A stretch of DNA of 64,000 nt. Origin: Dimorphilus gyrociliatus (taxonomy: Eukaryota > Animalia > Annelida). Location: contig CAJFCJ010000005.1 of the NCBI GenBank assembly GCA_904063045.1, positions 3,811,689 to 3,875,688 of the forward strand. The letters run 5' to 3'. Position numbers and translations under genes: made by a program. Positions 583 to 16,366 of the stretch are shown here, piece after piece. The stretch's first letter is position 1. The number at the start of each line of letters is the position of its first letter. Under the pieces are notes generated by a model, which had not been told where the DNA came from, searched no databases, and worked only from the letters and a program-made list of their open reading frames with translations.

Positions 583-640
583 GACATGGTATGTATGTCA
601 TGGCAAGTAAAAGTTATTTTCATCTATTCCTTCCATTCCT

Positions 641-3342
641 CTAGACGAAAATGTAGGCTGTCCAGTAGACAATGTTAAAGGTGAGAAAGGCTAGTGGAAA
701 GGCTTTTCTTGATATTTTATCGATCTTTCTGGCCTTTTGTCGACCATCCGGATCTCGGACGTAACCGCGCTTGTCCATTGCTTCGCGGAAATTGCGTCCG
801 TTGTTGATAATGTTAATCTGTGAGGTTAAGAATAACAAACTACTTTTTCTCAATAATGGATTAATAGCTAATGGAGGTAGGTGGGTAAGAGAAAAATTGT
901 GTTTACAAGAAAAGTGTTATAAAGAGAGGAAAACTGATTAAAACCTGTTCAAGTGCAATCTCCTCCTGATGTGTAGGTTGTGCTGCCGCTGCTGCATGAC
1001 CTGCTAACAATGCTCTTTTCCGGAACGTATTACGAGCTGATTGACGAATTTCCTTTCTTGAAAATACATTAACAACGGCAAATTCTAGAAGAGAAGCAAA
1101 AACGAAGATCAAACACATCGACATCCAAACGTCTATTGCTTTTATGTAGGAAACACGAGGAAGCTGCGACCTATTCCCCGTCGATTGTGTTGTCATCGTC
1201 AATACAGTAAGCAGGCCTATTGTTACTCTTGCCGGTATGGCGTCTATACTTATCCAAAACGCAACCCAGGAAAGAATTACGATGAGAACGCTTGGTATAT
1301 ACAATTGAATCATATAATAGCCGATATCCCTCTTAAGAACGAAGTTAACCGACAAACAAGGATAGGAACCAGTCGTATAGTTTTGGGAACAATCTTTTAG
1401 GAAGAACTTGACGAACCTAAACTGAGGTAAATCCAGCTGACCAGAATCCATTTCAACTGGATTATCCAGCCAGTCGTAAACTAAGGTGTCCGTTGTGTAT
1501 CCAACTGTTGTTGTTTATAAAGAGAGGAATCGAGATGAAGATATATTGATATATTGATATATATATATAAAATATGAGCAGATTGAGACATGAGAGATAG
1601 ATAGATGGATAGATAAATAGATGTATACACGGCAGAGAGAACAGAATTCGAAGATTGAAGGTAGAGCGATGCAAAAAAAAAAAAATTTATTGTTTATATT
1701 GATTGCCATAACAATATAGTTTAATATATACTGACAACTTTCGAACATCATGGGACAAGTTTGTGTGTCTAGAGGGTATTTGTGCAATTTCATCGGGCAG
1801 GAAAGCGTTGCGGTAATTCTGCAGTTTTTTAATCTCATTAGGATTTTATAAAGAGTATTGATCGTAATTCTTTTTTTCATTCTTTTTATTTTATCACCTA
1901 CTTACTTGGAAACATACCACAACATACCACTATTCTTTAGCGTCAGTAGCCTATTTGGAGTTGTTATATCGTGGTATTTAGCTAATTTTTCATTTCGAAA
2001 AAAAACATCCGGAATCCAAATCTTGTTCCACGTTTCATCTTCTAATTTTATTTCTGTGGTATTTATTCCATTGATTTTTCGAGGTTTAAATTTTAATCTT
2101 CTGTCCGTCCAATTTTGTCTTAAATAAACGTTTAACGAATAGTCCTGTGTCGTTTTTATGAAAATAGAGTAAATTACTATAATTATATTATTCAATTTCC
2201 CCAATTTCAAATCATCCCCAACGATTTGATAAGAAAACTGCTGTTTTCTTTCAGTATCCTAATATTAAGGAAAAAACCTATTGTATTATTTCTATATTAC
2301 TTATATATTCCATATAAATAAACATAAATAGATTTGTAACTTATATATCATTACAAAATACATTTTATTGTAAAGTATATACAAAGTTTTCTCCTTTATT
2401 TATATATTAAATACCCTTGTACTATTTTTATCTATATGTTTATTTACAGTTTAGTAGTTTCCTTAGATAGTTAATATATATATATATATATTTATAGTAT
2501 ATATGTAAAACGAAAGAGAAAAAAAAGAAAAAAAAACTCGCCATGGTTTGTTCGCTTATTGCGTAAAAGCTATTTATGTAAATGCCAAGGCGCACGTTTG
2601 TTGGTCCTGCGTAACAAATAATTCTAAAATAGCAAGTAATATTTTAATTGGGTATAGAAAACATTTAGGCCTATAAAGGGTGTGACAAACATGCGTGCAA
2701 TTCAGAGAAAACAATATACAACAAACGTTTGATAGCATGCAACTAATTTATTTAATTAAAAAAGCATAAGAATCGAAGTCTTTTAACGATCATATCAAAA
2801 GCATAAAAAAGTATAAAAAAAATAAAAGAAAGGAATATTGAGTGGATAAGGGAAGAAAGAAAGAGAAAGAGAGAAAGAGGGAAAGAGGGAAAGATAGAGA
2901 TAGATAGATAGAGAGAAAGAGAGAAAGAGAGTGAGAGACAGACAGACAGAGAGAAAGAAAGAAGAAAGAAAATGATACTGAAGGGAAAAGTTTTGTTTTG
3001 TTTGGTTGGTCGTTATGATGAAATTATAAAATAAATAAAAAAGAGATTGGTATATATCGTGAAGAAAGAATAAGAAAAAAAACGAAATATGTAAATTGAA
3101 TAGAGCAAATCGAATAAATAAAAAAAAATGATTCTTCCTATCAAAAATCATCAGTTAGGATGAAGATCATGCAATGAAGCCGTTCATTCTTCAATCGTTA
3201 ATTTGCATAAATAAATCCAAGTGCTTGCTCGAGAGTATTAAATTAGACGATAGAAAGAAAGAAAGGTAGTGTAATCATAAAAGAAGAAAATTGAGAAAAA
3301 GAAGAAAAGGAAATAAAAAAAAAGCTTTGAATATATATACAG

Positions 3343-3392
<50 letters not shown>

Positions 3393-4234
3393 ATGTATGA
3401 ATTTCCCATGTTATATGAATATCGGTATGGAATATTAAGTATATAAATATGCATATTTCTAAAGATACATGTGATATTTCTATAATTTATGTATAGGACA
3501 TATTTTATAAAATAATTCGTTAATATATATATATATACTGTATACTGCACATGGTTAATTGATATTCATATAACATAGGCTTTTGAAGAGCGTTTAAGAG
3601 TATCAATTAATTATTAATTAATGATTATGAACGGTTTTTTTTTTATTAATGTTTCTTTCCGGTTGATTAGGAAATAATAAAGAATGAAAGAAATAAAGAG
3701 AGAAGGTTTGAAAGAAAAACTAAAATAGATTATTTTAGGCTTTGTTTTTTATTTTTATTTTTTTGTTGTTTTGTTTTATATTGTCTTGTTTTGAACGCCT
3801 TACCAGGATATGGCGGTGACCGACCGTACTTTCGTTGATATGATCGTAAAAGCTTGCTAGCTAGTTTACTTTTTCTGCAAATCAAAAATATACACGGTAG
3901 GAATTTAGACTTTTTTAAGGCCTATATTACATCCTTGATTCGTTTCTTTAGGCATGCCGAAACGTATTTACAGGAAAATGCCAACAACACAAGAGAAAAC
4001 AACTAAATATAGGGCTACCATTTGGAGGAGGATCCTGCCGTTCGTAGCCTTTCAAGATGTTCGTTACGAATTTGCTCGTCGTCATGCCTCTTCGTTTATT
4101 GCGCCTGAATTTTTTTCCACAATTCAAGAATTTTTAACAATTTTTGTTTTGTTTTCATTTGTTTTAGATTTCCATTTTGTTTTTTAAATAGAAGAATAAA
4201 GTTATATTTATACTAGATTTCTCCTATAAATAGT

Positions 4235-4265
<31 letters not shown>

Positions 4266-5442
4266 GATATATCGATATATATATATATACTGTATATGTC
4301 TATATCTACTGTATATCTCGTCCTCTGAGGCTGAGAAGTTTTATTTTCTTTCATTTATTTCAAACAGATTCACCCAAAAGGTTTTTTTGCAAGTATAAGA
4401 ATTCCATATAAATAAACTAACATGTACACTATATCTATATATAAAAAAGAAAGTATTTTATTTGTTTTCTCCCCTCTTTTGATAAGACTGACTATTATTA
4501 TTACAATCAATCAGTCAAAGGAATAATTTTCATTAATTATTACGTCGTTATTTTAATTTATTTCCTCTTTTTTGTTCCTAATTTCAATTTAGAAAGAAAG
4601 AAGGAGAAAAAAATGAAATTAGGTGTATCCAAGCATTTACTTAATGTTTTTTTTTTCTTCTTCTTTTCTCTCTTGTTTCATGAGGATAAAAAGGAAAACA
4701 AATCGGCTTACGTAGATCGGATACGGGCATTGTCGAATGTGTCAGAAATGTAATTCATTCGCAATTCTAAATTACATCTATGACACATCCGACACCGTCC
4801 GCAGAGAGGCGATAAATGAACAAAAAATCTGCGAACAGCTAATCTTTATATATAACGTGTCTACGTGTTCAAGACGGATGAAAACGTGTTCAAAGCAAAC
4901 AAATACAGGTGAATTTTAATGATCACTTTTTTTTGTCCAATTTAAAACTATAGGAAAGATTTATACAGCATGATATAATATACATATAATTTATATTAAT
5001 ACATATATATATATATACGGTATATACTATATATAGTTTGAGCTCGTTTTATCATGCTGTATGTATGGAATACGAAAACTGGTCTCGAATTTTCATATAA
5101 TTTATTATGTAGGCCTAGAGCAAAAAAAGAAATATTTTTCTCTCCTCACTGTATACATTAGAAAAAGTGTATACAATAAAGTATATGTAAATATTAATAT
5201 ACATATAGTGAGAATATTTAATTTCAAAACGAAAAAAGTTCAAGAAAACCGTAAACTTATATGTTTTAATTACTTTTGAATATTATGTCTTAATAAATAT
5301 TCATAAGGCAATACTTTTAATTAATGAATATTAATTTCTACCTGGATGTTTTTGTCTTATTTTTCTTAGCATCTGCCAAGTGGACGGAAGATAGTATGAC
5401 TAGAACGATTAGGATGAACATTAGAACGCCATCTGCCTGCAT
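641..5442 (-). CDS. Anion-selective Cys-loop ligand-gated ion channel, GluCl/glycine-receptor-like subunit
   Basis: Exons (minus): 5442-5342 (signal peptide MQADGVLMFILIVLVILSSVHLADA), 4828 or 4777-4712, alternative 4104-4019 or 3874-3804, 2606-2542 (GPTNVRLGIYINSFYAISEQTM), 2144-1906, 1818-1736, 1504-945, 817-641 (stop TAG). All junctions are phase-compatible. Cys-loop CPMKLHKYPLDTQTC, loop-C disulfide CSQNYTTGSYPC, anion filter PAR in M2 (IPARVTIGLLTVLTMTTQ), TM4 IDKISRKAFPLAFLTFNIVYW. Confidence 0.93.
3348..3387. repeat. (TA)n microsatellite
   Basis: Direct reading. Confidence 0.95.
3804..3874 (-). CDS. Alternative exon 3B of the GluCl/GlyR-like gene (KSKLASKLLRSYQRKYGRSPPYP)
   Basis: ttgcag|A...CCT G|gtaagg; 71 nt; phase 2 in, phase 1 out; paralogous in position and motif (LL..Y......PP) to exon 3A. 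Confidence 0.75.
4019..4104 (-). CDS. Alternative exon 3A of the GluCl/GlyR-like gene (RNKRRGMTTSKFVTNILKGYERQDPPPN)
   Basis: ttcag|G...AAT G|gtagcc; 86 nt; phase 2 in, phase 1 out; resembles the N-terminal helix plus 'L..GY....P' motif of Cys-loop receptors. Confidence 0.7.
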
Positions 5443-8400
5443 CGTTCTGTGCTCTACAAAACGAAATTAAAGAAGATTAATTATAAGAAAAATCATTGAA
5501 ATAATAAACCAACGTAATAGGCAAGTTTAGCAAGAGGAATACGATAAAATACATATAGACGCCTATTGAATTTCGAATAATTTGAAAAAGAGTCGAAAAG
5601 TTGATATGTTTCTGAGTAAACGACGATATGTGTATACGCATATGTATATCCGGCTAAGAATGTAAATATATCGACATAGAATGCCAATACAGTTTCTTTC
5701 CTTTCTGTTCTTCCATTTTTCTCCTTCTTACACACACTTAGTTACTCATTCGCTCTTGCTCGCTAGCTCACATTTTCTCTTTCTTTTTCAGTTCATTCCA
5801 TCATACTCAGCCGTAGGTCGGCCTTCTCGCCAGACTGCAATTGCGGTTGCGAAAACAGCTACTTTTCTTATTCCGTTCCATCAACGGAAGGCTTGTTACG
5901 GGCTTAAAGCATGCTAGCCTCTCATTACTTTTGCTTGGTCTCTATCGCGAGTTTATTGCTTTAAGGAGGCTTAGCGCAAAAAGTGTTTCTAGTCGGAACG
6001 GGATTTGTACTAAAGCGTCCGATGATGGATGTTTTCGCCCTCCGATAATCCCCTCTTAAGCAGTGCTACTTTATTTTTTTTTAAAGTCCTCTCGCCTCAC
6101 TGAGTTTACTTACTTTCTTATCCTATACAGGCTTCTTGGCTCACATCGATTCGTCGTAAACGTCCTTTAGCGGGTCGAAGGTGACGTTCGGTTTTCGTCT
6201 AGCATTCTAAAAATAGAGAGCGCAATTAGGAATTCTTTCACTCAAAAATTATGTACAGTTGGCAGATCAGATTACTGTTCGATCAATGATTTGTGGATCT
6301 TCAAAGGCATAATATATCCGTTACATGTATTCTAAAACCACCTTAGCTGTACGCTATTTTGTTTTTTGTTTAAGTGTTAGAATATGCACAGTTATCTAAA
6401 TTTTCGTCTCAAATTGCACGTAAAGCCAATTTAAAAGTATAAAATACTTATTCCAGAGTATATATTCAAGAAAAAAATTGCTAGTGCACATTAATCACTA
6501 GAAGCGTCGCCTTCGAATCGAACGTCTGTAGACACAGAAGCGTCTTTCGAGTGCATAGTAAACATCATAAAGTCTAAGAAAAGTGTTCTCGAACGAAGCG
6601 CTTACGATTGATATCCCGTTATAATATATAAACCATCTTTTAACTCTGTGTTTTTCTTTTCTTTCCTCTTCCTCTTTTCTCATAATCTAGCTATCTCTTG
6701 TTTTTTTTCTCCAATCCTTATTCCCTCCCCCTTATCGTCTTCGTTATAAGAGGGGAGGGAAGAAAATAACTAAAAAAATAGGCCTAATACTTATTTTTCG
6801 CCAATAAAATAAATAAAAGGGTTAAAGACATTTAGACAGATAATACGCCCAAAGAGAAAGAGTGGGAGAAAAAACACAGACAGGATAGAGAGACAGAATA
6901 AGAGATAGAGTGAATGAAAATAAGAGTGAAGGTGAAAGAGAGATAGAATAAGAGAGAGAGAGAGACGGAGATTTTCGTTGTTTTTGTTTGACTTTTAACA
7001 TCTGTTAGACGGTTATAGACAAGGATAGTTAAAGATAGTCTTCCATTCTAATTGGGCTTTATATCTAGAGGCGTTGTTACAAGGTAGCTTTGATGAATGA
7101 ATAAAATCGATTGGTAAGGTTGAAATTAAAAGTCCGCAACGATTGCTCTTTAATTATAGGAAAAACAATTAAGTTTAAAAAAAAAACCAGATCCGAATTG
7201 AATGTTACATATCAATAGTAGTTATGGAAGGGAAGTTGGGGAAGTAAGACGGAGCGGAGGGGAGAGTGTGAAAAACTATGTGATCGAAAGCGAAAGAGAA
7301 AGAGTGCGAAGAGGAAAGAGCACGTGAAAGAGAATAAATAGGAAAAGGAAGGAAATAAAAAATAAATAAGGGTTAAGAGTGGATAAAAAGGATTTCTTGC
7401 TTTCTTATTTATTTTTGGAAAATGGCGTTTAAATTAAAGTGTGATGAACAGGAAAAGAAATACGAAAAGAATCTTGATAGGCACAGAAGAGGAAAGGATG
7501 GAAAAGATGAAGCGCTGACTGCAATATTAATCATATAAATTTACGTATACGCCAAACAGGAGAGAGATATGGCTAGGGTCGGGGCCGTTGCGGATTAAAT
7601 GCCAACTGTCTTGCACAAAGATAAGATATCTGCTTAGCGTTTTCTCTTTTTTTCGGCAATAAAATGGAAGAAGAGGCAGGAAAGTGGGGGGTGAAGATTG
7701 GTTCAACGATTATTATCTCGGGCTGTGTTCTATGTATCTAGAAGCAAGAGGGTGTGGCGTTTGAAAAAGAAATTGTGAAATAAAATCGATTAATAAACTC
7801 TCGGTAGAGATTAATTATAGAGGCGTTGGCTAGTTGTATTTACACGAGGATCAGTTCGGACTTTAGCTATACCGAATGGCACTCGAAACGGCGAATAGGT
7901 TGACGTGATATGAATTTAATTCATCATCATCCATAGAAATCACTTGTGACGCCCTACGCCATTTCGGCAACGGTTGATCGAACCTCCGTTCCTATTCCTC
8001 TACTGTTAGATCGTTTAGTTTCTTTTTTTTCCTCTTGAACAACTTTTATACTTTAATATAGTTTATGGCCAACTGAAATATTTATTAGCTAACTTATGAA
8101 AAATAGATTGAAATATAATCAATTGACTACGTTCTCTTCTATTTACAAAACGCCAATAGTAGATGTTCCAGCCAGCTGACATTTACTATAAAGAGCAGAA
8201 AATGCTCATCAGCAATTTCCACAAATGTGTAAATAGCTTAAGCGACAGTTGAGTTTACGGAATGGACAGATAGACATAAAGATTGGAGAAAAAAAAAAAG
8301 TAAAAAGTTTTTTTAAAGGAGATAGAAAGAAAGAAAAAAAAGCGGAGTTTGAGGCGGCGGCGGCGGCGGTAGATGCGGCGGCAGAGTCACAAAATGAGAA

Positions 8401-14027: not shown

Positions 14028-16366
14028 CTACATCAACGCCCCTATTCCATCGCTACTAGCTCCTAGATAGAGATTCCAATAGAATATATTGAGTATTATA
14101 AAAGCCGTGGGGAAGAGAATTCTTGACACTTTATCGATCATGCTTACGGAATTTATACCATCTGAACTTCGAACTCTCATATGGCGATAAGATGAACTTG
14201 CAGTTAGACAATTATAAAATTTATAGCAGCAATTTTCTTTTCTCTTCCTCACTTGTGATTGGTTAACACAAGAGCCATTAAATTGCGCTGAATATTGCTT
14301 TGCTTTCGGTCTAAGGAAATAGCCTCTATTGTTACTATTATCCTGTAAGGGTCAATTAAAAATTGGTAACGGAGATATATAATGAAAAAACGATGAGGAA
14401 AAAGCTAAAAATAAAGAATGCCAAACGTTTTCAAAGCAAATTAGACTAATTGAATCTGTAGGAGAACGTGTACCTTTTCTTCCATTGAAAATCTAATATC
14501 AGTTGAATCTTCATCATCATTTTCGGCTAGATAGTCATCTTCCATATCTGACTCGAAGAAAACTTCACCACTTCCATGCTTTGTAAAAAAATGGACGCTT
14601 GCGAATTGTATAATAGCCGCTAATACGAAGGCGAAGCACATATTAACGAAATAGTCTAAAGCAGTTGAATATGAAACCTGTATGAATGGAATTAAAGTTT
14701 GAAAGTTGATCTAGAAGAACTTTTATATATATACAGTATATATATAAGTAATTTAATTTGGAACCTTTGGGAGATCATCCCGGTTATCGACTCCAACAAA
14801 AACCATGGTTAAAACCGTAGTTATACCTGTAGATAACGAAAGAAGAAAGAGATGAAAAGAGATATTTAGAATAAATATTATCTTTTAGGAAAGGATAACT
14901 AAAAGCAACTCTAATTTTTTCCGATCTACTCATTTAGTATAATATCATCTTTAAATTACTATTGTAATTTTATGTATTATCTACGATATTAGGTGTATAC
15001 AAAAAAAAAATATATATATATATAGACATATGCATATATATACAGTATATAATATACTATATATTTATATATATTTAATTACCTAACGTCATCCTGTCGG
15101 CTGTTGCTTCTCTGTTTATCCAAAAGGCAACCCAGGATAATATAACAAGAAGGGAACACGGAACATAAACGTTGATTAGAAAATAGCCCATGTGTCGTTT
15201 TAGCGTAAAAGTTACGTGGAGTAATGAAAATTGGCCTATTTCAAAGAAAATAACGAAAATCACTGAATTATGGTGACGGGAGGGAGAAATCGTTTACCTC
15301 TTGCGTGTGAAATTGTTCGATTTCCTTGTGGAAAGTCGATAAGATCAAACTGGGATAAAGTCATATCGGAAGCCATCTTGATCGAACTGCCCGCACCGTA
15401 GGTCCAAACGTACAAGACATCGGAAGTATCATAACCGTGACTGGCCAACCGTAGAGGGCAATTTTGCGTATCCATGGGAAAATTCTCCAGATGCATAGGG
15501 CACGTAGCCTTGATAGTTAACCTGTTATCAGTATATTAAGACCAGTCTAAGGAAAACATCTCTAAACTAATTCCCCAAAGAGTAAACGAATATATGGGTG
15601 GAATAGAATAGTTAGGAGTTTTTTTCAATTTAAATTGGAAAAAGTAGGAATACCTCATAGAATACAGAATTCTACCATCCTTATTGACCCTTAATAATTT
15701 ATTCGGAGAGGTCACTGTGTGTAAATAGGATTGTTTTCCATTTAAAAAATGTGTATCCGGTTTCCAAATCTTCTCTAAAAATGTAATACTGACACGAAGC
15801 GTTTCTATTTCACCAGAATCGAACTGCAGTCTCTTATCAACCCAACTTTGACGAAAGTAGCAATCCATTTGATATGCCATATCTCTTTCGGAGACTGGAC
15901 CCATACTTCTTACGTTTAGATTAACATCGACTAGAGTTGGAGAACCTATAGATAGAAATTGATACCTTCTCAAAATGCACTTGAGTATTCTTAAGATTTG
16001 GGCATAAGAAAAAGGAGAGTAAAGAAATGAGGATTTTTAGTTAATCATAATGATAATTCTAGTAATTAATCAAAAAAATATGAAAAGAAAGGATAAACCA
16101 TAAGGATCAATTTTAATTTAAAGGAACTTTAGAGAAAAGATAAATATTTCTAAATGCTTCAATTTAAACTATTAAAGGTTAAATTTAATTTAAAAGGTTT
16201 GTTAATCACCTCCAAATCCAGGTCTCAATCTTTTATCATATCCCCGTAAGAGTTTGTTTAATAGTTGAGTAGTGTTCTGGACGATTTCTTCTCGGCTAGA
16301 GGTATTATTCTTAGAAAGTGCCGAACTGAAAAAATTTGTTGTGAAAAGGATAAGTAGAAGAATCAT
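14028..16366 (-). CDS. Grd: GABA-receptor subunit of the GRD/CG8916-like clade
   Basis: Exons 16366-16210 (signal peptide, LLRGYDKRLRPGFG), 15945-15654, 15521-15298 (Cys-loop CPMHLENFPMDTQNC), 15235-15083, 14826-14765, 14677-14474, 14342-14028; all GT-AG and in phase. M2 region EATADRMTLGITTVLTMVFVG carries the ADR filter typical of insect GRD. Clade call is from recalled motif similarity. Confidence 0.88.

What the first reader, a model, noticed from the sequence alone, without database searches (positions are those of the whole stretch)
3804..4104. Mutually exclusive duplicated exons encode the N-terminal helix of a GluCl/GlyR-like receptor
Seen: between exon 2 (ends phase 2, AC|gtaag at 4712) and the GPTNV exon (starts phase 1 at 2606) lie two exons, 4104-4019 (RNKRRGMTTSKFVTNILKGYERQDPPPN) and 3874-3804 (KSKLASKLLRSYQRKYGRSPPYP). 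Each restores the frame on its own. Joining both gives GAA AAA GTA AAC TAG, a premature stop, so they are mutually exclusive by frame. Known: this segment (helix alpha1 and loop L1) contributes to subunit interfaces in Cys-loop receptors, and insect GluCl has mutually exclusive exon-3 variants at a comparable position. Inference: these two variants are far more divergent from each other than I would expect for a recent duplication, so they may change assembly partners or trafficking, and could be ancient or convergent with the arthropod case.
Basis: partly seen in the sequence, partly recalled or inferred. Interest (0 to 1): 0.75.

Follow-up and report, generated by a model that had tools for sequence, protein, structure and literature searches.

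The report
Twin top-helix exons, worm chloride channel
A glycine-receptor-like chloride channel gene of the tiny marine worm Dimorphilus gyrociliatus holds a second, unannotated but splice-ready copy of the small exon that builds the receptor's top helix. A brachiopod relative is annotated as using such a pair one at a time, but I could not show that the worm uses its second copy.

Summary
The window is Dimorphilus gyrociliatus. The gene is DgyrCDS3998/3999, an anion-selective Cys-loop receptor closest to glycine receptor alpha subunits. My exon model with exon 3a reproduces the 436-aa NCBI protein exactly.

The coordinates, phases and frame arithmetic of the two exons hold. Exon 3a (4104-4019, 86 nt) or 3b (3874-3804, 71 nt) alone keeps the frame. 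Both together, or neither, give early stops.

Exon 1 splices straight to 3a, and "exon 2" is half of a 33-bp hairpin. Exon 1 ends in the same phase, so the logic survives.

Exon 3b is not chance:
- It has exon-like GC and strong splice sites.
- It keeps the helix's hydrophobic face and the invariant Tyr and Pro-Pro.
- It is the third-best alpha1-helix match among 2,791 open stretches in the window.

A Lingula homologue has the same layout (59- and 65-nt alpha1 exons), and RefSeq isoforms X1 and X2 each use one.

Use of 3b is not shown.

Insect GluCl exon 3 is the neighbouring 68-bp exon, not this one.

Verdict: probably a real frame-enforced exclusive pair (about 0.6). The scan noted many other such pairs in this genome, but not this one elsewhere.

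The parts
5342..5442 (-). Exon 1: start codon, signal peptide, NKT sequon. Ends in phase 2 (AG|gtagaa).
   Evidence: Identical to residues 1-33 of DgyrCDS3998.
4728..4797 (-). 33-bp hairpin in intron 1.
   Evidence: -41.6 kcal/mol, z -5.6. (the arms are unique in the window). (only sub-threshold miRNA-like Rfam hits)..
4019..4104 (-). Exon 3a, 86 nt. Encodes a basic N-terminal extension (RNKRRGMTT), the alpha1 helix (SKFVTNIL) and the L1 loop (KGYERQDPPPN). It is the copy used in both annotated mRNAs.
   Evidence: (profile E 9e-8).
3875..4018 (-). 144-nt intron between 3a and 3b. It is long enough that steric hindrance cannot enforce exclusivity.
   Evidence: GC 0.35.
3804..3874 (-). Exon 3b, 71 nt, unannotated. 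Encodes KSKLASKLLRSYQRKYGRSPPYP, an alpha1 helix with the same hydrophobic spacing, the invariant Tyr and Pro-Pro, three extra loop residues and no N-terminal extension.
   Evidence: rank 3 of 2,791; GC 0.42 against 0.25 in the introns.
2542..2606 (-). Exon 4 (GPTNVRLGIYINSFYAISEQTM), 65 nt, with a GC donor (ATG|gcgagt). It is the counterpart of the 68-bp exon that is alternatively spliced in insect GluCl.
   Evidence: junction fixed by P0290. PMC10380907.
641..2144 (-). Exons 5-8: 2144-1906, 1818-1736, 1504-945 and 817-641. They hold the rest of the ligand-binding domain, the Cys-loop, M1-M4 and the stop codon.

Best explanation
DgyrCDS3998 is a glycine-receptor-like, anion-selective pentameric channel subunit. 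The exon for the N-terminal alpha1 helix and the following L1 loop exists in two tandem copies, 3a and 3b.

Each copy can be spliced between exon 1 and exon 4 without changing the frame. Including both, or neither, gives an early stop, so only single-copy messages can make protein. The frame and, presumably, nonsense-mediated decay enforce the exclusivity. Steric hindrance does not, because the intron between the copies is 144 nt.

The two products would differ only at the apex of the extracellular domain:
- 3a carries a disordered polybasic extension (RRNKRR) and a mildly charged helix.
- 3b lacks the extension, has a strongly basic helix surface (core net charge +5 against +2) and a loop three residues longer.
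- The buried helix face and the invariant Tyr and Pro-Pro are kept in both.

By analogy with other pLGICs, this region governs folding, subunit assembly and surface delivery rather than ligand binding.

Shown: gene identity, exon anatomy, frame logic, homology of 3b to alpha1 exons, and the Lingula precedent. Inferred: that 3b is actually spliced in, and what the swap does.
For: - Gene model: it equals NCBI protein CAD5114968.1 exactly.
- Family: Pfam Neur_chan_LBD and Neur_chan_memb; GlyR alpha2 E 3e-105.
- Frame arithmetic.
- Composition: 3b has GC 0.42 against 0.25 in the flanking introns.
- Splice sites: 3b has the best acceptor tract and a GTAAG donor, stronger than those of 3a.
- Rarity: only 10 stretches of that quality occur in 128 kb of both strands.
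- Profile match: an alpha1 profile from 16 orthogroup proteins of other species ranks 3a first, the neighbouring paralogue's alpha1 second and 3b third of 2,791 open stretches.
- Pairwise similarity: p about 2e-4 by shuffling.
- Conserved anchors: 3b keeps the spacing h-h-x-x-h-L-x-x-Y-x-R and Y54 and P60, invariant in 24 homologues.
- Precedent: Lingula anatina has exon 1 in phase 2, alpha1 exons of 59 and 65 nt (both 2 mod 3) and a 68-nt exon 4. RefSeq X1 and X2 each use one alpha1 exon, and joining both gives a stop.
- Habit of the clade: annotated isoforms of relatives in Lineus, Tubulanus and Owenia differ in ways that look like exon swaps elsewhere in the protein.
- Function of the region: the alpha1 helix and N-terminal extension affect assembly and surface expression in nAChR and GABA-A/C receptors (PMC4786271).
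Against: - Both annotated Dimorphilus transcripts use 3a and none uses 3b.
- No RNA evidence could be obtained.
- 3b scores weakly against the profile in absolute terms (E 0.18 for the whole window). It carries a three-residue insertion in a conserved loop.
- No orthologue sequence of the 3b region was recovered, so selection on 3b is untested. The close relative's contigs start at exon 5.
- Two other related loci (L001, L009) showed no alpha1 exon at all within the available flank.
Confidence: 0.6

Rival explanations
1. 3b is a relic of an old exon duplication. It is no longer used, or is spliced in only as noise, and the gene makes only 3a-type protein.
For: Only 3a appears in the two annotated mRNAs. 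3b is much more diverged from the orthogroup consensus than 3a (8 against 29 bits) and has a three-residue insertion. Lingula also carries a third alpha1-like copy that looks truncated and non-splicing, so dead copies do occur.
Against: The frame is intact and both splice sites are near consensus. GC is exon-like. Every anchor residue of the helix is kept, while the changes fall on exposed positions. A dead 71-nt exon with sites this strong would be spliced in and would poison the message. The genome has been described as compacted (own knowledge, not tested here).
Confidence: 0.2
2. 3b is a poison exon. It is included together with 3a to create a premature stop and lower the receptor level, and it never replaces 3a.
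For: Joint inclusion gives a stop five codons into 3b. The splice sites of 3b are stronger than those of 3a. The 144-nt intron allows 3a-3b splicing.
Against: A poison exon has no need to keep an open, alpha1-like reading frame with the family's invariant residues in exactly the phase that replaces 3a. In Lingula the equivalent exons are annotated as alternatives.
Confidence: 0.15
3. 3b is a chance open stretch in an AT-rich intron.
For: The intron holds 8 open AG..GT stretches of the right length class. BLAST at E 50 did not link 3a and 3b.
Against: The stretch combines the right intron, strand and phase with strong splice sites (10 such stretches in 128 kb), rank 3 of 2,791 against an independent alpha1 profile and a shuffle p of 2e-4. 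Together the odds are of the order of 1e-5.
Confidence: 0.03

Closest known systems
Lingula anatina 'glycine receptor subunit alpha-3' gene: RefSeq isoforms X1 (XP_013386520.1) and X2 (XP_013392719.1)
   Same: Same receptor clade (LGIYINSFYSISEQTM exon 4). Exon 1 ends in phase 2. Two tandem alpha1-helix exons, both 2 mod 3 (59 and 65 nt), lie before the 68-nt exon. Each isoform uses one, and both together give a stop.
   Different: The Lingula copies are more alike (score 48 against 37) and about 1 kb apart. Neither pairs specifically with 3a or 3b. Both Lingula copies are annotated. I did not check the Lingula isoforms against reads, and my paper searches found no description of them.
Insect GluCl exon 3a/3b/3c (Tribolium, Spodoptera, Bombyx and others)
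   Same: [quoted passage not shown] The variants differ in expression site and in current size or surface density rather than in agonist affinity (PMC10380907, PMC13512814).
   Different: It is a different exon: the 68-bp, 23-aa exon just upstream of Loop D (PMC10380907), which is the counterpart of exon 4 (2606-2542) here. The insect copies are of equal length and 47-66% identical in DNA. There are three copies, not two.
Vertebrate GLRA2 exons 3A/3B and insect RDL exons 3 and 6 (own knowledge, not checked here)
   Same: Mutually exclusive exon pairs in GlyR and GABA-type subunits that alter the extracellular domain.
   Different: From memory, they involve the 68-bp exon or later exons, not the alpha1 helix exon. 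The copies differ by only a few residues.

Membership tests
Anion-selective Cys-loop (pentameric) ligand-gated channel, GlyR/GABA-A/GluCl branch | Neur_chan_LBD plus Neur_chan_memb domains | tested here: met
   PF02931 1e-16 on exon 5 and 2e-7 on exon 6; PF02932 7e-34 on exon 7. GlyR alpha2 3e-105.
Anion-selective Cys-loop (pentameric) ligand-gated channel, GlyR/GABA-A/GluCl branch | Cys-loop C-x13-C and a P-A-R motif before M2 | tested here: met
   CPMKLHKYPLDTQTC (C171...C185) and IPARV (P282 A283 R284). C171, C185, A283 and R284 are invariant and P282 nearly invariant in 24 homologues.
Anion-selective Cys-loop (pentameric) ligand-gated channel, GlyR/GABA-A/GluCl branch | Agonist identity (glycine, glutamate, GABA or other) | not testable with these tools
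   The closest solved chains are GlyR alpha. Ligand specificity in lophotrochozoan members of this clade cannot be read from similarity alone.
Mutually exclusive exon pair | Tandem homologous exons of the same phase class between the same constitutive exons | tested here: met
Mutually exclusive exon pair | Single inclusion keeps the frame; double inclusion or double skipping does not | tested here: met
   436 aa and 431 aa open frames; stops at codon 67 (both) and codon 46 (neither).
Mutually exclusive exon pair | Transcripts carry one copy or the other | not testable with these tools
The annotation shows only 3a.
Mutually exclusive exon pair | Both copies kept by selection in relatives | tested here: inconclusive
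   Lingula has the same layout. The sibling worm's contigs L005 and L006 begin at exon 5. Exact-sequence look-ups of nearby ORFs found nothing.
Homologue of the insect GluCl exon-3 switch | The alternative exon is the 68-bp exon directly upstream of Loop D | tested here: not met
   PMC10380907 places insect exon 3 at nt 168-231, 68 bp, upstream of Loop D. Here that exon is E4 (2606-2542), which is single. The duplicated exon is the one before it.

The most novel reading that the evidence does not exclude
The alpha1-helix exon pair is an old lophotrochozoan module, present before annelids and brachiopods split. It lets one chloride-channel gene present two different apex surfaces and N-terminal extensions: with or without a polybasic, furin-like RRNKRR stretch, and with a mildly or a strongly basic helix. 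The swap would choose assembly partners, surface delivery or extracellular binding partners without touching the ligand site or the pore.
Probability: 0.25. Interest if true: 0.6.

Novelty: new variant of a known kind. Interest (0 to 1): 0.4.

Why it matters
Exclusive exon pairs are well known in Cys-loop receptors, but the described cases alter the 68-bp exon near Loop D or later exons. Three full-text searches on this theme returned no paper describing a swap of the alpha1 helix and N-terminal extension.

That region is linked to assembly and surface expression in other pLGICs, so a natural two-state version would be a ready-made experiment on what the receptor apex does.

If the pair is shared with brachiopods, it would also date this kind of receptor diversification to early lophotrochozoans.

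On the practical side, the current Dimorphilus annotation lacks exon 3b.

Tried and rejected
Read evidence
So there is no read evidence.
- After, no letters of 2846-2902 were sent to any search tool. That stretch was only ever part of the local window file in my scripts. Rfam and repeat scans started at 2910.

Joined models
- Joined frames were only translated locally to check stops.

Searches for related DNA
- Exon-by-exon protein searches found only genomic ORF fragments of other lophotrochozoans.
- Locus L001 (68% in exon 5) has 6 kb upstream of exon 4 with no detectable alpha1 exon.
- The metagenome scan gave two distant loci, also without one.
- Contigs for P0153, P0156 and P0045 had no DNA on offer.
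- L002 and L003 lack the 5' part of the gene.
- Exact look-ups of the exon-1 ORF and of ten ORFs around 3a and 3b found nothing on record.

Ideas dropped
- A generic alpha1 profile did not rank 3b. Only the orthogroup-specific profile did.
- Coral origin, suggested by coral metatranscriptome runs, was rejected once the exact Dimorphilus match appeared. The worm is presumably a tank or reef associate.
- A search for selector or docking pairings found only (TA)n tracts, which are uninformative.

Full report
**What is there**

Reading the minus strand of 600-5500 shows a complete gene:
- exon 1, 5442-5342
- exon 3a, 4104-4019
- exon 3b, 3874-3804
- exon 4, 2606-2542
- exon 5, 2144-1906
- exon 6, 1818-1736
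- exon 7, 1504-945
- exon 8, 817-641

Single exons hit Pfam Neur_chan_LBD and Neur_chan_memb. The closest solved chains are glycine receptor alpha subunits. The Cys-loop (C171-x13-C185) and the P-A-R motif before M2 are present and conserved across 24 homologues.

**Identity**

A search seeded with an orthologous fragment returned DgyrCDS3999 of Dimorphilus gyrociliatus. Its 90% cluster also holds DgyrCDS3998, CAD5114968.1, 436 aa. Exons 1+3a+4-8, translated locally, equal that protein residue for residue. So the window is D. gyrociliatus, as earlier notes of the scan said. DgyrCDS3999 is the same message with the last intron retained.

**The observation**

One detail is wrong: the "exon 2" at 4777-4712 is in neither annotated mRNA, because exon 1 is joined directly to 4104. 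That stretch is half of a 33-bp hairpin (-41.6 kcal/mol, z -5.6). The hairpin's arms are unique in the window, and it gives only sub-threshold miRNA-like Rfam hits. Exon 1 also ends in phase 2, so the frame argument is unchanged:
- 3a alone gives 436 aa.
- 3b alone gives 431 aa.
- Both give a stop at codon 67.
- Neither gives a stop at codon 46.

**Is 3b more than an open stretch in an intron?**

- Composition: GC is 0.42, like the other exons (0.31-0.49), against 0.25 in the long flanking introns.
- Splice sites: the acceptor has the best pyrimidine tract of the gene and the donor is GTAAG.
- Rarity: across both strands of the 64-kb window, only 10 stretches combine such sites with the right length class and an open phase-matched frame. 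Most of those are probably real exons of other genes.
- Profile: I built an alpha1 profile from 16 orthogroup proteins of other species, with no Dimorphilus sequence, and scanned all 2,791 six-frame open stretches. It ranks 3a first (E 9e-8), the alpha1 of the neighbouring paralogue second (E 4e-4) and 3b third (E 0.18).
- Pairwise alignment: 3a against 3b gives SKFVTNILKGYER---QDPP over SKLASKLLRSYQRKYGRSPP. The score is 37 against 16.3 +/- 3.6 for shuffles, reached by 0.02% of 5,000.
- Conserved positions: 3b keeps the hydrophobic spacing of the helix and the invariant Tyr and Pro-Pro. The changed positions are mostly turned into Lys or Arg.

Together these make chance negligible and indicate a true duplicate of the alpha1 exon. 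BLAST alone did not link the copies, and a generic family profile did not rank 3b.

**What the exon encodes**

HMMER aligns 3a to SPSDFLDKLMG..SGYDARIRPNFKG of human GlyR alpha2. An AlphaFold model of DgyrCDS3998 has low confidence (pLDDT <50) at residues 31-37 (the RRNKRR stretch) and a confident helix at 43-50 (block pLDDT 87), followed by the loop into strand beta1. The swap therefore changes the N-terminal extension, the exposed face of alpha1 and the length of L1. In nicotinic, GABA-A and GABA-C subunits, deletions or insertions here reduce assembly or surface expression in a subunit-specific way (PMC4786271 and the work it reviews). That is the basis, by analogy only, for the proposed function.

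**Relatives**

- Close relative: two Logan contigs (L005, L006) come from a close relative whose DNA is 88-96% identical. Exon 7 differs at 66 bases, 57 of them third positions, with 5 amino-acid changes. This is a good distance for a selection test, but both contigs begin at exon 5.
- Failed routes: exact-sequence look-ups meant to reach that worm's exon 3 region failed. Other orthologous loci lacked the 5' part or showed no alpha1 exon within reach.
- Lingula anatina: isoforms X1 and X2 of "glycine receptor subunit alpha-3" differ only in the alpha1 segment. In the genome, exon 1 ends in phase 2. Two alpha1 exons of 59 and 65 nt (both 2 mod 3) lie about 1 kb apart before the 68-nt exon 4. 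Joining both gives a stop. A third, apparently truncated copy sits just upstream.
- Annotated isoforms in Lineus, Tubulanus and Owenia relatives differ in the Cys-loop segment and in the segment after it, in ways that look like further exon swaps; I did not read those genes. A Dimorphilus paralogue has two exon-5-like exons in tandem.

So exon swapping is common in this clade, and the alpha1 pair has a precedent with the same frame logic. The short sequences give no one-to-one pairing between the worm and Lingula copies, so common origin and repeated duplication cannot be told apart.

**Comparison with insects**

Insect GluCl exon 3 is 68 bp and 23 aa, and lies directly upstream of Loop D (PMC10380907; PMC13512814 gives 61.76% identity between 3A and 3B, which equals 42 of 68). 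That is the counterpart of exon 4 here. The insect switch is a neighbour of this one, not its equivalent.

**What is missing**

There is no transcript evidence for 3b. 

**Verdict**

- Real, frame-enforced exclusive pair with a productive 3b isoform: about 0.6.
- Unused relic: about 0.2.
- Poison exon: about 0.15.
- Chance: about 0.03.

This is a new variant of a known kind and of moderate interest. Junction reads or one RT-PCR would settle it.

Noticed in passing
window 4728-4797 (-): A unique 33-bp hairpin in intron 1 of DgyrCDS3998 (-41.6 kcal/mol, z -5.6). Only sub-threshold matches to miRNA precursor families. It could be an intronic miRNA precursor or a small foldback element.
   Followed up: partly
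window 2536-2541 (-): Exon 4 uses a GC donor (ATG|gcgagt), giving a GC-AG intron. The exact match to the annotated protein fixes the junction.
   Followed up: yes
window 3331-3402 and 4226-4297: Two (TA)n tracts bracket the 3a/3b pair and are complementary over about 60 nt. They are low-complexity, so pairing in the pre-mRNA is only a thought.
   Followed up: no
window about 14060-16365 (-): A second pLGIC gene, GABA-A-like. Signal peptide and a single alpha1 helix share one exon, and the exon 4 and exon 5 equivalents are fused. It has no alpha1 duplication.
   Followed up: partly
L004:8095-8331 and L004:8538-8774: The close relative's copy of paralogue DgyrCDS3992 has two tandem exon-5-like exons (39% and 52% identical to exon 5 here). 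The annotated protein starts inside the second. This is a candidate exclusive pair in the loop D/A region.
   Followed up: no
L007:5889-5987: Lingula carries a third alpha1-like copy (CSWFLRKLLRKYDKITSKS*) with the same acceptor context as exon A. It lacks the Pro-Pro, a usable donor and a compatible length, so it is probably a dead partial duplicate.
   Followed up: partly
proteins P0253/P0254, P0250/P0251, P0260/P0310, P0261/P0299/P0301, P0259/P0295: Annotated isoforms of Owenia, Lineus and Tubulanus relatives differ in the Cys-loop segment and in the segment after it (the exon 6 and early exon 7 equivalents here), which looks like exon swapping; I did not read those genes. One Owenia model (P0255) seems to include both copies in tandem.
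   Followed up: no
window 4076-4104 (-), protein residues 34-39: Exon 3a opens with RRNKRR, a furin-like polybasic motif in a low-confidence (presumably disordered) stretch just before the helix. 3b has no such stretch.
   Followed up: no
L005 against window 600-2157: Divergence from the close relative is uneven: about 4% over exons 5-6 and their intron, but about 12% over exons 7-8. The cause is unexplained.
   Followed up: no
one search runs X3-X8: Coral metatranscriptomes hold near-identical pieces of this worm gene. This suggests Dimorphilus, or a very close relative, lives among the sampled corals or in their tanks.
   Followed up: no
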